NCBI GenBank assembly: GCA_964035545.1
Contig: OZ037770.1
Location: 3,938,662-4,002,661, forward strand
Direction: 5' to 3'
Source of the DNA: Bugula neritina
Lineage: Eukaryota; Animalia; Bryozoa
DNA: 64,000 nt
The notes beneath the pieces were generated by a model that worked only from the letters and a program-made list of their open reading frames with translations, was not told the DNA's origin and searched no databases. Position numbers and translations under genes: made by a program. Below are positions 3,898 through 8,453 of this stretch, piece after piece; positions within the stretch are counted from its first letter, which is position 1, and each line of letters begins with the position of its first letter.

Positions 3898-4035
3898 CTT
3901 TCAGGTAGATTAGATAAATTACAGTTCACCATATCTAACTCCTCAAGTGATGTGAGTGATGACACAACTTCTGGTACTGTGTTGAGAGGATTCCTTTTTA
4001 TGTCTAGTTTCTCTAACTGAGTCAGCTGACATAGA
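3898..4035 (-). CDS. Gene A LRR cassette exon A-L1 (LDIKRN / LDMVNC)
   Basis: 138 nt, tacag|T...AG|gtttgt. Confidence 0.9.
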
Positions 4036-4725
4036 CTGTAATATAAAGCGTATGATATATACATTGCATATTATAGAATTGAAAAAAACATTGCATTTAA
4101 CATATTTTTCAATAACACAATGACATAACCTAATTATACTTGGTAAGGAACTGCATGTTTTACGATTTCAAGTATTAAATGTTTCAAACAATACAAAAAC
4201 TGTGACAAACAAACCTCTTAGGTAGAGTAGATGAAACTATATAAACTATATATATATTTATATATATATGTGTGTATTATATATAATACAGTTATAATCA
4301 AACTAGATAGAGAAAAAGCTATCATTTATATGAGTCTGCATGACGTATTACAGAAAGTATGCCAGGGAAGAACATAATACTATTCTCTATACGCTAACAA
4401 ACAATGCTAAGAAACTCACTTTAATAGTTTTTTGAACTGAAAGTTCAAGTTTTGATCAACTTTGGTATATGATGAACAACGAGTTTAGGGTACCATTTTA
4501 CTATCTTGCATGGATATTACGTGTGCATTTCTTATAAAAGACAGTTTTGTAATTTATAAAGGAAATCGAATTATTGAACGTATTATAGATATGAAAAACT
4601 TGTTATGTATACACCAATTCTAGCTTTACAGAGAAGAAGTATGAACACCGTAACGTAGTTTAACTGTGTTGACTATTTTGCTGAAAATTTTTTTTAATGG
4701 TAAGTCTATATTGTGACACACAAAC

Positions 4726-4863
4726 CTCTCAGGTAGATTAGATAATTCACAGTCCATCATATCCAACTTTTTAAGGGATGTGAGTGATGACACAACTTCT
4801 GGTACTCTTTTGAGAAGATTCTTTGACATTTTTAGTTCTTCTAACTGAGTCAGCTGACACAGG
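4726..4863 (-). CDS. Gene A LRR cassette exon A-L2 (LKMSKN / LDMMDC)
   Basis: 138 nt, open, canonical splice sites. Confidence 0.9.
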
Positions 4864-4901
4864 CTGTAATATAAAGTGTGTGACATATGACATATATAGA
4901 A

Positions 4902-4970
4902 TATATATATATATATATATATATATATATATATATATATATATATATATATATATATATATATATATAT
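4902..4970. repeat. (TA)n microsatellite
   Basis: Direct reading. Confidence 0.98.
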
Positions 4971-5069
4971 TATTGAGTTTGACTGGCTTGAGTTTACACA
5001 CCTTTTAAATATGCTTTAGTAAAACTATAAGTTTTACTATAGCGAAGGTGTGGGCCATGGTACTCTGTT

Positions 5070-5114
5070 CTGTGCTGATGAGGGGACAAATCCCGAAACA
5101 GCTGCTGTCCACAG
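5070..5114 (+). ncRNA. Type I hammerhead ribozyme, copy 2
   Basis: Same fold, stem II GGGG/TCCC (one G-U pair). Cleavage after 5109. Confidence 0.88.
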
Positions 5115-5340
5115 ATTGAGATATTACGCTCTCATTTATTGCTCAGCAATGACATTAAATGATTGAGCACTCTCACCATGGTCACAAACTCAAGCTGCTA
5201 GCATTTTGCAATGCTCGTGACTCCTAGGTGACCCCTAGAGTCACTTGAGCACTCTGGCTTGAGTTTACACACCTTTTAAATATGCTTTAGTAAAACTATA
5301 AGTTTTACTATAGCGAAGGTGTGGGCCATGGTACTCTGTT

Positions 5341-5385
5341 CTGTGCTGATGAGGGGACAAATCCCGAAAAAGCTGCTGTCCACAG
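5341..5385 (+). ncRNA. Type I hammerhead ribozyme, copy 3 (C>A mismatch in stem III)
   Basis: Core CTGATGA/GAAA/GTC retained, but GAAA-AAG instead of GAAA-CAG. Cleavage site after 5380. Confidence 0.75.
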
Positions 5386-5391
5386 ATTGAG

Positions 5392-5810
5392 ATATATATA
5401 TATATATATATATATATATATATATATATATATATATATATATATATATATATATATATATATATATATATATATATATACATATACATATACATATACA
5501 TATACATATACATATACATATACATATACATATACATATACATATACATATACATATACATATACATATACATATACATATATCTAGCTGAGTATTCAAT
5601 ATTCAATTTTCAGTATTTAGCAGTCCTTTCTAGTTTACTAGTATTTACTGAGTATTCAATACTCAGTAAATACTAGTAAATTGCTCTTTTCCTCAATAAT
5701 ATATATATATATATATATATATATATATATATATATATATATATATATATATATATATATATATATATATATATATATATATATATATATATATATATAT
5801 ATATATATAT
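5392..5810. repeat. (TA)n + (TATACA)n (5392-5583) and (TA)n (5699-5810) tracts enclosing a perfect palindrome
   Basis: Direct reading. Confidence 0.95.
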
Positions 5811-6318
5811 CCAGCCAATAATTCAATGCTTAGTAACTATACTAGTAAATTAGAAATGACTGCCTACTATAATATATTAAATTTTTATAAACTAAAAATA
5901 TAATATTATAATATAATGGCATTCTTTAAAATTATGGTATTCCCAAGATATTACAAACCATTACATGCGTATAACTTTCAAAAGATAATGTTATATTTTA
6001 AATTATACAATGACTTACAATAATCCTATTTAGTAATACCACTTTGTAAGCATATAAAGTTGTGAATACTAATAAACTAGAACTTATTGCTTACTATTAA
6101 TTACATTTGTATAGCACAACAATATATAATGGCATATAACTTTGAAATTGTGTTATTCCCACGATATTATAAACCATTGCATATATACGTGTAACTTCAA
6201 AATATTGCATTTCATACTTTTTAATTATACAATGGCACACCATAATAACACTTGGTAAGCATATAAAGTTGACAAATATTGAAGGTTTAAAACAATACAA
6301 AAATTCAGGCACACAAAC

Positions 6319-6456
6319 CTCTCAGGTAGAATAGATAATTTGCAGCTCCACATAACCAACTCTTTAAGTGATGTGAGTGATGACACAACTTCTGGTACTG
6401 TGTAGAGAGGATTCCCTTGTATGTATAGTTTCCCTAAATGAGTCAGCTGACACAGA
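6319..6456 (-). CDS. Gene A LRR cassette exon A-L3 (LYIQGN / LVMWSC)
   Basis: 138 nt, open, canonical splice sites (not in the ORF track). Confidence 0.9.
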
Positions 6457-6967
6457 CTGTAATATAAAATTTTTTAATATATGTTATAGTCACTAGTCCA
6501 CTTGTATTTTGTTATAGTTTGACATGTATACAGAGTATAATTACAAAGTTGCTGTAACTTATACCACATGATTGTGAAGGACAAGATAACTACTATATCA
6601 ATTCAATTATTTAACTCAAATACTAGACCACTTATAGGTGCAAATATAATAATTTGTTAAAATAGAGTACAAGTATTCAATACTCAGTAAATACTAATAA
6701 ACTAGAAATGACTGCTTACTATATATAAACTAATCTTTTGTAAACTAAGAATATAATATTATAATATAATGGCATACTTTAAAACTATTGGATTTCCATG
6801 ATATTTATACAAACCATTACATGCACATAACTTTCAAAAAATAATTTTATATTTTCAATTATATAATGACTTACAATGATACAACTTAGTAATACTACTT
6901 TGTGTGAACAAATAAAGTTGTAAAATATAGAATGTTCCAAACAACACAAAAGTTGTGACAAACAAAC

Positions 6968-7105
6968 CTCTCAGGTAGATTAGATAAGTTGCAGTTCAAC
7001 ATATCCAACTCCTTAAGTGATGTGAGTGATGACACAACTTCTGGTACTGTGTTGAGAGGATTCCATTTTATGTCTAGTTTCTCTAACTGAGTCAGCTGAC
7101 ACAGA
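6968..7105 (-). CDS. Gene A LRR cassette exon A-L4 (LDIKWN / LDMLNC)
   Basis: 138 nt, open, canonical splice sites (not in the ORF track). Confidence 0.9.
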
Positions 7106-7638
7106 CTGTAATATAAAGTGTGTGATATATGTCACAGTCACTAGTTCACTTGTAGTGTGTTATAGTTTGACATATATACAGAGTATAATTACAGATTTGC
7201 TATAACTTATACCACATGAATGTGAGGGACAAAGTAACTAATATATCAATTTATTTTGCTATAATGATTTTATTTAATTTAACTACTTGACTCTTTGACC
7301 ACTTATAGGTGCAAATATAATAATTTATTAAAATAGAGTACAAGTATTCAATACTCAGTAAATACTAGTCAACTAGAAATGGCTGCTTATTACTATATAA
7401 AATAATTTTTTGTAAAATAAGAATATAATAATATAATATAATGGCATACTTTAAAACTATGGGATTTTTATGATATTACAAATCATTACATGCATATAAC
7501 TTTCAAAAAATAATTTTATATTTTCAATTATATAATGACTTACAATGATACAACTTAGTAATACTACTTGGTGTGAACAAATAAAGTTGTAAAATATAGA
7601 ATGTTCCAGACGAAACAAAAGTATTGTGACACACAAAC

Positions 7639-7776
7639 CTCTCAGGTAGAGTAGATAATTTACATATCCACATATACAACACTTTAAGTGATGTGAGTGA
7701 TGACACAACTTCTGGTACTGTGTAGAAAGGATTGTGTCCTATGTCTAGTTTTTCTAACTGAGTCAGCTGACATAGA
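7639..7776 (-). CDS. Gene A LRR cassette exon A-L5 (LDIGHN / LYMWIC)
   Basis: 138 nt, open, canonical splice sites. Confidence 0.9.
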
Positions 7777-8315
7777 CTGTAATATAAAGTTTTTAATATA
7801 TGTTATAGTCACTAGTCCACTTGTAGTGTGTTATAGTTTGACATAAATACAGAGTATAATTACAGAGTTGCTATAACTTATACCACATGAATGTGAGGGA
7901 CAAGGTAACTAATATATCAATTTATTTTGCTATAAAAATTTTATTTAATTTAACTACTTGACTCTTTGACCACTTATAGGTGCAAATATAATAATTTATT
8001 AAAATAGAGTACAAGTATTCAATACTCAGTAAATACTAGTAAACTAGAAATGGCTGCTTACTATATAAATCAAATTTTTGTAAAATTAGAATTTAATATT
8101 ATAATATTATAATATAATAGCATACTATAAAACTGTGGAATTTCCATGATACTACAAACCATTACATGCATATAACTTTAAAATAAATAATTTTATATTT
8201 TAAATTATATAATGACTTACCATAATGCAACTTCGTAATACTATACTTTGTGTAAGCATATACAGTTGTGAAATATCGAATGTTTCAAACAATACAAAAA
8301 CTATGACAAACAAAC

Positions 8316-8453
8316 CTCTCAGGTAGAGTAGATAAAAAACAGCTCTTCATATTCAACTCTTTAAGTAATGTGAGTGATGACACAAATTCTGGTACTGTGT
8401 TGAGAAGATTATCTCCTATGTATAGTTTCTCTAACTTAGTCAGCTGACGCAGA
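8316..8453 (-). CDS. Gene A LRR cassette exon A-L6 (LYIGDN / LNMKSC)
   Basis: 138 nt, open, canonical splice sites (not in the ORF track). Confidence 0.9.

What the first reader, a model, noticed from the sequence alone, without database searches (positions are those of the whole stretch)
3898..8453. Modular 138-nt phase-symmetric LRR cassette exons with hypervariable binding-face residues
Ten exons (6 in A, 4 in B) are each exactly 138 nt, phase 2/2 and encode two 23-aa LRRs, so any can be skipped, duplicated or swapped without a frameshift. Variation is concentrated in LxxLxLxxN/C positions. Repeat 1 reads YIGD, DIGH, DIKW, YIQG, KMSK, DIKR, DIGW, DIRW, DIGG. Repeat 2 reads NMKS, YMWI, DMLN, VMWS, DMMD, DMVN, NMRS, NMWN, DMVI. 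The backbone TVPEVVSSLTSL is almost fixed. This is the signature of ligand-driven diversification seen in plant NLRs, lamprey VLR cassettes and the exon-shuffling ROCO genes of brown algae. Here it occurs in an animal and is coupled to a caspase fold.
Basis: partly seen in the sequence, partly recalled or inferred. Interest (0 to 1): 0.86.

Follow-up and report, generated by a model that had tools for sequence, protein, structure and literature searches.

The report
Diversifying two-repeat LRR exons, ROCO-caspase genes
Ten equal-sized small exons form the sensor arms of two neighbouring animal genes (leucine-rich repeats, a GTPase switch, a caspase-like domain); seven codons per exon change several times faster than neutral DNA, as in fast-evolving immune receptors, but one copy carries a frameshift and exon mixing in cells is untested.

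Summary
Six exons in gene A and four in gene B (minus strand) are each exactly 138 nt. All have AG/GT borders, are phase 2-2, and encode two 23-residue LRRs.

The exon is very common in this genome. A search gave 849 first-look candidates; all 150 that were scored had E below 4e-24, and almost all lie in a roughly 4-Mb cluster. Arrays hold 3 to at least 15 cassettes.

Variation is concentrated in seven codons: x5, x7 and x8 of both LRRs, plus x10 of the second. In 54 independent cassette pairs matched by their flanking introns, non-synonymous divergence at these codons is 5.9 times intron divergence. Stricter designs still give 2.3 to 2.7 times. The scaffold is under purifying selection.

Arrays change by duplication and loss of exon-plus-intron units and by exchange between paralogs. 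A and B are colinear only at the ends of their arrays.

Locus-specific caveats:
- Gene A has a 5-nt insertion that stops the frame before Roc.
- Gene B's caspase has EASSG where QACxG is expected.
- No RNA or second-individual data could be obtained, so exon skipping and somatic change are untested.

The closest precedents are brown-algal LRR-ROCO exon shuffling and vertebrate NLRP 171-bp two-LRR exons. The scan has reported the same family on other DNA of this genome.

The parts
9158..9384 (-). Gene A, first coding exon. ATG at 9384, 227 nt, donor GTGAGT, ends in phase 2.
   Evidence: It is 75 codons plus 2 bases. Its omega against gene B is 1.9. There is no RNA evidence.
8316..8453 (-). Cassette A1 (138 nt, two LRRs).
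   Evidence: Its upstream intron is 92-94% identical to that of B1, while the exons are only 88% identical.
7639..7776 (-). Cassette A2.
   Evidence: It is a tandem duplicate of A3: about 4% of intron positions differ but 13% of exon positions, and the exon differences cluster in the two hypervariable patches.
6968..7105 (-). Cassette A3.
6319..6456 (-). Cassette A4.
4726..4863 (-). Cassette A5, the most divergent. Its unit is a duplicate of the terminal A6/B4 unit.
   Evidence: Blast block 4252-4893 matches gene B 44912-45543 at 85%.
4204..4233 (-). Relic of a cassette. Only the last 19 or so bases of the exon and its GTTTGT donor remain.
   Evidence: It is colinear with the 3' end of B3.
3898..4035 (-). 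Cassette A6, the last one. It differs from B4 at 1 of 138 bases, a synonymous change.
566..2602 (-). Gene A large exon: three more LRRs, then Roc-COR. The acceptor is at 2602. A 5-nt insertion at 2484-2488 causes a stop at 2473-2475. The Roc-COR frame is open from 2485 to 566.
   Evidence: Pfam Roc at 3e-8, 34.3 bits against a cut-off of 27. The indel is absent from gene B, L052 and L053. The lower limit given is where the open frame ends, not a mapped donor.
47940..48166 (-). Gene B, first coding exon. ATG at 48166, donor GTAAGT, ends in phase 2.
47093..47230 (-). Cassette B1.
46283..46420 (-). Cassette B2. Its flanks are mosaic: the upstream intron is closest to B3, the downstream intron to a cassette about 450 kb away.
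45686..45823 (-). Cassette B3.
45377..45514 (-). Cassette B4, the last one.
42502..44533 (-). Gene B large exon: LRR tail plus Roc-COR, in frame with the cassettes.
   Evidence: Pfam Roc at 5.6e-8. The frame was read from the acceptor at 44533. The lower limit is where the open frame ends.
38492..40253 (-). Gene B caspase-like exons, given as open-frame pieces 40005-40253, 39438-39740 and 38492-38800. EASSG stands in place of QACxG.
   Evidence: Pfam Peptidase_C14 at 5.7e-10, 3.3e-8 and 0.013, on consecutive parts of the profile. The motif was read.

Best explanation
These exons are the germline-encoded, modular sensor arm of two tandem paralogs. The paralogs belong to a very large gene family with the layout LRR, Roc-COR GTPase, caspase-like domain.

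Each 138-nt exon adds two 23-residue LRRs of the SHOC2/ROCO type to a solenoid.

Because each exon sits in a repeat unit of about 0.55-0.85 kb together with its intron, unequal crossing-over adds and removes cassettes. Exchange between paralogs makes the interior of the arrays mosaic.

The scaffold of the exon is held almost constant. Seven codons on or beside the beta-strand face are diversified far faster than neutral DNA: x5, x7 and x8 in both repeats, and x10 in the second.

What is shown: the exon anatomy, the family size, the variable cassette number, the mosaic flanks and the rate excess.

What is inferred:
- The variable residues bind a ligand.
- Binding is relayed through Roc-COR to the caspase-like domain.
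- The family acts in immunity, cell death or allorecognition.

At this locus the output domain of gene B is a pseudo-caspase. Gene A is probably recently inactivated, or the frameshift is an assembly error.
For: Anatomy and phase.

LRR type: the cassette profile matches SHOC-2 at 7.6e-22 and also LRRD1 and VLR chains. The best full-profile hits in 1.8 billion representative proteins are LRR-Roc-COR proteins.

Family size: 849 candidates, of which 150 were scored, all at E below 4e-24. 163 of 165 detected exons are 138 nt. Arrays hold 3 to at least 15 cassettes.

Hypervariability across 157 cassettes: entropy is 2.1-3.2 bits at codons 11, 13, 14, 34, 36, 37 and 39, and at most 1.2 bits elsewhere. 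Trp makes up 21-29% of residues at codons 14 and 36.

Rates in 54 independent pairs matched by intron:
- Intron divergence is 0.043.
- Scaffold dS is 0.051 and scaffold dN is 0.028.
- Hypervariable-site dN is 0.25, which is 5.9 times intron divergence (bootstrap interval 4.7-7.4).
- The a-priori 'xxLxLxx' face gives 3.6 times.

Only the seven codons exceed the intron rate, at p below 1e-4 each. Choosing pairs on one flank and measuring neutral divergence on the other still gives 2.3-2.7 times. Scaffold synonymous divergence tracks intron divergence in the strongly diverged pairs. Whole-exon replacement is therefore not the main cause.

Modularity:
- A and B are colinear only at the array ends.
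- 20 of 105 cassettes have their two flanks pointing to different partners.
- A2/A3 and A5/A6 are local duplications, and a cassette relic remains.

Gene context: Roc and caspase exons. Between A and B, omega is 0.28 for Roc-COR, 1.7 for the first cassette and 1.9 for the N-terminal exon.
Against: There is no RNA evidence, so the joining of the cassettes to Roc-COR and the caspase rests on compatible phases only.

Pairwise dN/dS on recombining repeats is not a clean test, for two reasons:
- Synonymous differences are also raised at the hypervariable codons (0.12 against 0.05).
- The youngest pairs are bimodal. Sixteen have 0-2 exon differences and four have 6-14. Short-patch gene conversion may supply part of the excess.

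In pairs with only 1-3 exon differences, enrichment at the hypervariable codons is weak: 6 of 20 differences, p = 0.07.

That the variable residues lie on the concave face was taken from the known LRR geometry and the brown-algal papers. It was not mapped on a model of this protein.

Gene A is frameshifted and gene B's caspase lacks its cysteine motif. This particular pair may not signal as the family does.
Confidence: 0.75

Rival explanations
1. The cassettes are used combinatorially in the body. Exon skipping or alternative inclusion of the frame-neutral exons would give many receptor isoforms from one gene, as reported for brown-algal ROCO genes and human NLRP3. This could hold in addition to germline diversification.
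For: All exons are phase 2-2 and of equal length, so any subset stays in frame. 153 of 157 cassettes keep the same non-consensus donor GTTTGT, with a pyrimidine at +3. Such a donor could make inclusion regulable. There are precedents in PMC11378527 and PMC6642158.
Against: No spliced contig of the family turned up in the protein or contig searches. Symmetric exons follow from tandem duplication of an exon and need not be used alternatively.
Confidence: 0.15
2. There is no positive selection. On this view the seven codons are simply unconstrained. Short-tract gene conversion between cassettes then makes intron-sister cassettes look over-diverged in their exons.
For: The youngest pairs have a bimodal count of exon differences. 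Synonymous differences are raised at the hypervariable codons. 26 of 88 diverged patches have an identical copy in a third cassette. Scaffold synonymous divergence plateaus at 0.12-0.13 while introns become unalignable. That plateau fits exon homogenisation.
Against: The residue make-up at these sites is far from neutral: Trp is 21-29%, and Gly, Asp, Glu, Arg, Lys, Asn and Tyr dominate. Among 7,334 pairs with unrelated introns, none has a near-identical exon. Identical patches are shared in only 0.1-0.3% of those pairs. Even pairs with at most 2 hypervariable codons changed show hypervariable-site pN about 2 times the intron rate. If conversion homogenises the exons, the persistence of diversity at exactly these codons itself implies selection for diversity.
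Confidence: 0.15
3. The gene A array (six of the ten exons) is part of a dead gene and is merely decaying.
For: A 5-nt insertion, absent from gene B and from two related contigs, stops the frame 42 codons into the large exon. A cassette relic and mobile-element insertions lie in the array.
Against: All six cassettes keep open frames and intact AG/GT sites. Omega for Roc-COR between A and B is 0.28. Any inactivation is therefore recent, or the insertion is an assembly error. A truncated LRR-only product is also conceivable.
Confidence: 0.5
4. Somatic DNA rearrangement or templated assembly of cassettes, as in lamprey VLR genes.
For: Only the presence of many similar LRR cassettes nearby.
Against: Both germline genes are already complete, with canonical splice sites on every cassette and compatible phases from the first exon to Roc. 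That is unlike an incomplete germline VLR gene. There are no orphan cassettes without splice sites in the window, apart from one 30-nt relic.
Confidence: 0.02

Closest known systems
Brown-algal LRR-ROCO genes with shuffled LRR exons (Ectocarpus, Saccharina; PMC3341825, PMC11378527)
   Same: Both have the LRR-Roc-COR order and the same repeat consensus, LxxLxxLxxLxLxxNxL. The LRRs sit on equal-length, frame-neutral exons. Exon number varies between clustered paralogs, and the arrays are not colinear. Positively selected sites cluster in the LxLxxNx part, on the concave face.
   Different: In the algae one LRR sits on each 72-bp exon; here two LRRs sit on each 138-nt exon. The algal proteins have no caspase. 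This is an animal genome. Alternative splicing is documented in the algae and untested here. Independent origin is likely but was not tested.
Vertebrate NLRP/NLR LRR exons (human NLRP3; PMC6642158)
   Same: It is an animal intracellular receptor family. Every LRR exon has one fixed length (171 bp), encodes exactly two LRRs and preserves the frame. NLRP3 exon 5 is skipped in a regulated way. The output is caspase activation.
   Different: The LRRs are ribonuclease-inhibitor-like, of 28 and 29 residues. The exon border lies inside the beta-strand; here it lies about 9 residues before it. The switch is a NACHT ATPase, not Roc-COR. The caspase is recruited in trans rather than fused. No comparable hypervariable patches were reported in that paper.
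Plant NLR and LRR-receptor genes under diversifying selection (established knowledge, not tested here)
   Same: They are clustered paralogs with unequal crossing-over and sequence exchange. Excess non-synonymous change falls at the solvent-exposed x residues of xxLxLxx.
   Different: Plant LRRs are usually not split into one exon per repeat unit. Here only x5, x7, x8 and x10 vary, and x2 and x3 do not.
Lamprey and hagfish variable lymphocyte receptors
   Same: They also use LRR cassettes with variable concave-face residues. VLR chains are among the sequence matches of the cassette profile.
   Different: VLR genes are assembled somatically from flanking cassettes into an incomplete germline gene. 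Here the germline genes are complete and built to be spliced.
SHOC2, LRRD1 and RSU1, intracellular 23-residue LRR proteins (PDB 7t7a, 9fqr, 7d2s)
   Same: These are the best solved-structure sequence matches (7.6e-22 to 4e-10). They share the same 23-residue period and the ...LxxLP... ascending segment.
   Different: They are single-copy conserved scaffolds. They are not an expanded, diversifying family.

Membership tests
Leucine-rich repeat, 23-residue 'typical'/SHOC2-like class | LxxLxLxxN/CxL core repeated with a period of 23-24 residues | tested here: met
   Every cassette holds two such units. L, N and C are invariant in 157 cassettes.
Leucine-rich repeat, 23-residue 'typical'/SHOC2-like class | Significant profile match to LRR proteins of known structure | tested here: met
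   SHOC-2 at 7.6e-22, LRRD1 at 6.8e-16, VLR-A at 7.7e-12.
ROCO proteins | Roc GTPase domain | tested here: met
   PF08477 scores 34.3 and 33.5 bits against a cut-off of 27 in the large exons of A and B.
ROCO proteins | COR domain directly after Roc | tested here: inconclusive
   COR-A scores only 17-18 bits against a cut-off of 35.3. More distant relatives found with the cassette profile have clear COR-A and COR-B.
ROCO proteins | LRR and Roc-COR in one polypeptide | tested here: inconclusive
   In gene B the frame runs unbroken from the first exon through the cassettes into the Roc exon, by phase arithmetic. In gene A it is broken by a 5-nt insertion. No cDNA was available.
Exon-shuffled LRR-ROCO candidate receptors (brown-algal type) | Repeat units on equal-length, frame-neutral exons, variable in number between paralogs | tested here: met
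   163 of 165 exons are 138 nt, all phase 2-2. Arrays hold 3 to at least 15 cassettes.
Exon-shuffled LRR-ROCO candidate receptors (brown-algal type) | Non-colinear or mosaic relations of exons between paralogs | tested here: met
   The interior of A is not colinear with that of B. 20 of 105 cassettes have discordant flanks.
Exon-shuffled LRR-ROCO candidate receptors (brown-algal type) | Excess non-synonymous change at concave-face sites | tested here: met
   The excess is 2.3 to 9 times neutral proxies, at seven codons only. One caveat is possible gene conversion. Another is that the face assignment comes from known LRR geometry, not from a model.
Exon-shuffled LRR-ROCO candidate receptors (brown-algal type) | Alternative splicing of LRR exons | not testable with these tools
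VLR-type somatic assembly | Incomplete germline gene plus donor cassettes that lack splice sites | tested here: not met
   The germline genes are complete. All ten cassettes have AG/GT sites and compatible phases.
Caspase (Peptidase_C14), gene B | Caspase fold (p20/p10 profile) | tested here: met
   Three consecutive exon pieces match profile positions 1-49, 50-130 and 173-212.
Caspase (Peptidase_C14), gene B | Catalytic Cys in QACxG | tested here: not met
   The motif reads EASSG in the translation of 39438-39740. The His-Gly dyad partner is present (THGG).

The most novel reading that the evidence does not exclude
The frame-neutral cassettes, all carrying the same unusual GTTTGT donor, are included combinatorially. 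On this reading each colony, zooid or cell would express its own set of LRR-Roc-COR-caspase isoforms. That would be an animal, intracellular, Dscam-like or NLRP3-like layer of receptor diversity on top of a fast-diversifying germline repertoire. It could serve pathogen sensing or colony allorecognition.
Probability: 0.12. Interest if true: 0.85.

Novelty: new variant of a known kind. Interest (0 to 1): 0.66.

Why it matters
Expanded, diversifying intracellular receptors are known from plants (NLRs), some animals (NLRs) and brown algae (ROCOs). This locus belongs to an animal family that builds the recognition arm the brown-algal way and puts a GTPase switch where NLRs have an ATPase. It also carries the caspase in the same chain.

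I found no paper describing this family. If the variable face binds ligands, the family offers three things:
- A compact natural library of LRR binders on a fixed scaffold.
- A test case for how exon-sized modules speed receptor evolution.
- A candidate for the unknown immune or allorecognition receptors of a colonial invertebrate.

This locus also shows how fast such genes turn over: a fresh frameshift in one copy and a dead protease in the other.

Tried and rejected
Splicing, skipping, expression, the reality of the gene A frameshift and between-individual variation therefore all remain untested.

2. Spliced transcripts in protein and contig collections. The Roc-COR exon of B finds only exon-sized ORFs on genomic contigs. 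The two nearest contigs (L052, L053) are 88-91% identical to both A and B. They are other paralogs or another lineage, not alleles.

3. The scan of metagenome contigs with the cassette profile gave only 4 distant loci at 37-50% identity.

4. The search of 1.8 billion representative proteins with the cassette profile returned generic LRR and LRR-Roc-COR proteins. It returned no joined-cassette protein of this family. There was therefore no referenced multi-cassette sequence to fold.

Exons were searched singly, by reference. Mapping the variable sites on a structure model was therefore left out.

6. Whole-exon gene conversion as the main cause of the excess exon divergence was rejected. Scaffold synonymous divergence equals intron divergence in the diverged pairs, and no near-identical exons occur between cassettes with unrelated introns. 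Short-patch conversion is not excluded.

7. Rfam found no family at the gathering threshold in the window. It found no hammerhead at E up to 1 in 2900-5700.

8. The organism was not identified independently. 'Bryozoan' comes from earlier notes of the scan only.

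
Full report
**What is there**

The window carries two tandem paralogous genes on the minus strand, about 38-42 kb apart. Large blocks of them are 88-96% identical.

Gene A, in transcription order:
- A first coding exon at 9384-9158. It has an ATG, is 227 nt long, has donor GTGAGT and ends in phase 2.
- Six 138-nt exons, A1 to A6, between 8453 and 3898.
- A large exon from 2602 downwards that holds three more LRRs and Roc-COR. 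Pfam Roc scores 3e-8, above the cut-off.

Gene B has the same plan, with four cassettes (47230 to 45377) and a large exon from 44533. It continues into caspase exons at about 40.2-38.5 kb. Three pieces there match consecutive parts of Peptidase_C14 at 5.7e-10, 3.3e-8 and 0.013. The caspase part of gene A lies outside the window.

All ten exons are exactly 138 nt. Each follows ...ttacag and precedes gtttgt. Each reads as 1 base, 45 codons and 2 bases, so every flanking intron is phase 2 and the split codon is always Ser.

The first exon also ends in phase 2, and the large exon of B is entered in the matching phase. Any subset or multiple of cassettes would therefore stay in frame.

The design is not local. 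A profile of the ten peptides gives 849 first-look candidates in the genome. All 150 that were scored have E below 4e-24. Nearly all lie between 2.5 and 6.3 Mb of the same contig, with a few on a second contig.

In the window plus 20 fetched arrays, 163 of 165 detected exons are 138 nt. My detector and the choice of arrays favour this subtype. Complete arrays hold 3, 4, 5 or 6 cassettes and others at least 15, mostly with a unit length of 560-600 bp.

**Where the variation sits**

In 157 cassettes, entropy exceeds 2 bits at codons 11, 13, 14, 34, 36, 37 and 39. It is at most 1.2 bits at the other 38 codons.

With the core written L1-x-x-L4-x-L6-x-x-N9-x-L11, these codons are x5, x7 and x8 of both repeats and x10 of the second. 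The x2 and x3 positions, which plant studies also count as exposed, are conserved here.

138 of the 157 peptides are distinct.

The variable positions use a restricted, binding-type alphabet. Trp makes up 21% and 29% of residues at codons 14 and 36. Gly, Asp, Glu, Arg, Lys, Asn and Tyr make up most of the rest.

**Is it faster than neutral?**

I paired cassettes by the similarity of 150 nt of intron on each side, without looking at the exon. I kept 54 disjoint pairs. The results:
- Intron divergence is 0.043.
- Scaffold synonymous divergence is 0.051, so the intron yardstick is sound.
- Scaffold non-synonymous divergence is 0.028.
- Non-synonymous divergence at the seven codons is 0.25. That is 5.9 times intron divergence (bootstrap interval 4.7-7.4) and 4.4 times the synonymous divergence of all codons.
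- The a-priori 'xxLxLxx' class gives 3.6 times.

Taken codon by codon, only the seven exceed the intron rate, each at p below 1e-4.

I also guarded against a winner's-curse bias. Pairs were chosen on one flank and neutral divergence was measured on the other flank, which recombination inflates. The ratio is still 2.3-2.7.

The local example is clear. A2 and A3 differ at about 4% of intron positions but at 13% of exon positions. Those exon differences fall in two patches around a central run of about 56 identical bases.

**Caveats on 'positive selection'**

Repeats that recombine violate the assumptions of pairwise dN/dS. Three results call for caution:
- Synonymous differences are also higher at the variable codons (0.12, from only 21 events, partly a path-counting artefact).
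- Among the 20 youngest pairs, 16 have 0-2 exon differences and four have 6-14. That spread is too wide for a single rate.
- In pairs with only 1-3 exon differences, 6 of 20 differences hit the variable codons (15% expected, p = 0.07).

Short-patch conversion may thus supply part of the excess. 26 of 88 diverged patches have an identical copy in a third sampled cassette.

Several results argue against conversion as the whole story:
- In strongly diverged pairs the scaffold synonymous divergence (0.080) matches intron divergence (0.067).
- Among 7,334 pairs with unrelated introns, no exon differs by fewer than 6 bases. Identical patches are shared in only 0.1-0.3% of those pairs.
- Non-synonymous divergence at the variable codons saturates near 0.44 once introns differ by only 6-12%. 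Scaffold synonymous divergence plateaus at 0.12-0.13 even between cassettes whose introns no longer align.

The exon scaffold is therefore kept or homogenised at the nucleotide level, while exactly these codons stay maximally diverse. That is what selection for diversity predicts. I rate diversifying selection as well supported, with point substitution and patch exchange both likely contributors.

**Modularity in the germline**

A and B align colinearly through the Roc-COR exon, the last cassette and its intron (A6/B4), and through the first cassette, the first exon and upstream (A1/B1). The interiors do not correspond.
- A2/A3 is a recent tandem duplication.
- The A5 unit is a copy of the terminal unit.
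- A 30-nt relic of a cassette 3' end, with its donor, sits at 4204-4233.
- B2 and B3 share an upstream intron (4% different). Their other flanks are closest to cassettes of an array about 450 kb away.

Genome-wide, 20 of 105 cassettes with close relatives on both sides have flanks pointing to different partners. First and last cassettes keep positional homology between genes, even across contigs.

Selection differs along the array. A6 and B4 differ by one synonymous base although their introns differ by 10-14%. A1/B1 and the first exon have omega of 1.7 and 1.9. Roc-COR has omega of 0.28.

**Locus-specific findings**

Gene A has a 5-nt insertion (2484-2488) that gene B and two related contigs lack. 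Read from the acceptor, the frame stops at 2473-2475, before Roc. Roc-COR omega is low and all six cassettes are intact. The damage is therefore recent, or it is an assembly error.

Gene B's caspase reads EASSG where QACxG is expected, with the His-Gly partner kept. The 'caspase fold' claim holds, but at this locus it is a pseudo-protease.

**Comparison with what is known**

The cassette is a 23-residue LRR of the SHOC2 type. Its closest profile matches are LRR-Roc-COR proteins.

Brown-algal ROCO genes are the nearest system. They have one LRR per 72-bp frame-neutral exon and the same consensus. They show exon shuffling, selected concave-face sites and documented alternative splicing (PMC3341825, PMC11378527).

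In animals, NLRP genes already show fixed-length exons (171 bp) that each encode two LRRs, and regulated skipping (PMC6642158). The exon logic is therefore not new for animals.

What is new is the combination: a ROCO chassis, a caspase in the same chain, a very large clustered family, and sharply delimited hypervariable patches.

I found no paper on this family. The VLR comparison fails on the defining point, because these germline genes are complete.

**Limits**

Exons were handled singly, by reference, so no structure map was made.
- That the genome is a bryozoan comes from earlier notes of this scan and was not checked here.
- Those notes also show that the scan reported this family and its cassette exons several times on other DNA of the same genome. 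My tests on an independent set of arrays agree with them. They add the conversion caveat, the NLRP precedent and the gene A frameshift.

Noticed in passing
window 3898-8453 and 45377-47230; 157 cassettes genome-wide: Every cassette uses the same non-consensus donor GTTTGT, with a pyrimidine at +3 (153 of 157). A conserved CA follows at +11/+12. The acceptor context ctttatattacag is also conserved. The first exons of A and B use ordinary GTGAGT and GTAAGT donors. Whether this donor type is common in the genome, or marks regulated exons, was not checked.
   Followed up: partly
window 3001-3300, 4908-5207 and 5179-5478: A repeat of about 270-300 nt is inserted in two introns of gene A. The copy at 3001-3300 is 99% identical to 4908-5207, and the second site holds a tandem dimer. 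It contains a hammerhead-like core (CTGATGAG...GAAAC at about 5075-5099 and 5346-5369). Rfam gives no hit at the gathering threshold or at E up to 1.
   Followed up: partly
window 12000-18000 and 50000-56000: A GC-rich block (0.46-0.49 against about 0.30 around it) upstream of each gene carries broken integrase-like open frames. It looks like a decayed retroelement that was duplicated together with the gene pair at 92-94% identity.
   Followed up: no
window 9158-9384 and 47940-48166: The 75-codon first exon has no Pfam match. Between A and B it evolves with omega of about 1.9: 21.5 non-synonymous against 3.5 synonymous differences. The N-terminal cap of the LRR arm may therefore be diversifying too.
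   Followed up: partly
window 33939-34928 (-): An intact 329-codon open frame lies between the two genes, with no Pfam match at E up to 0.1. Its hydrophobic stretches suggest a membrane protein.
   Followed up: no
window 35200-36400: Long (TG)n/(CA)n and (TA)n microsatellites give a strong local GC skew of -0.18, then +0.29.
   Followed up: no
L052 (JGI sample 3300002729, 8.1-kb contig): A related contig carries a Roc-COR exon followed by Peptidase_C14 exons in the same order. It is 88-91% identical to both A and B. The fused layout therefore recurs in an independent data set.
   Followed up: partly
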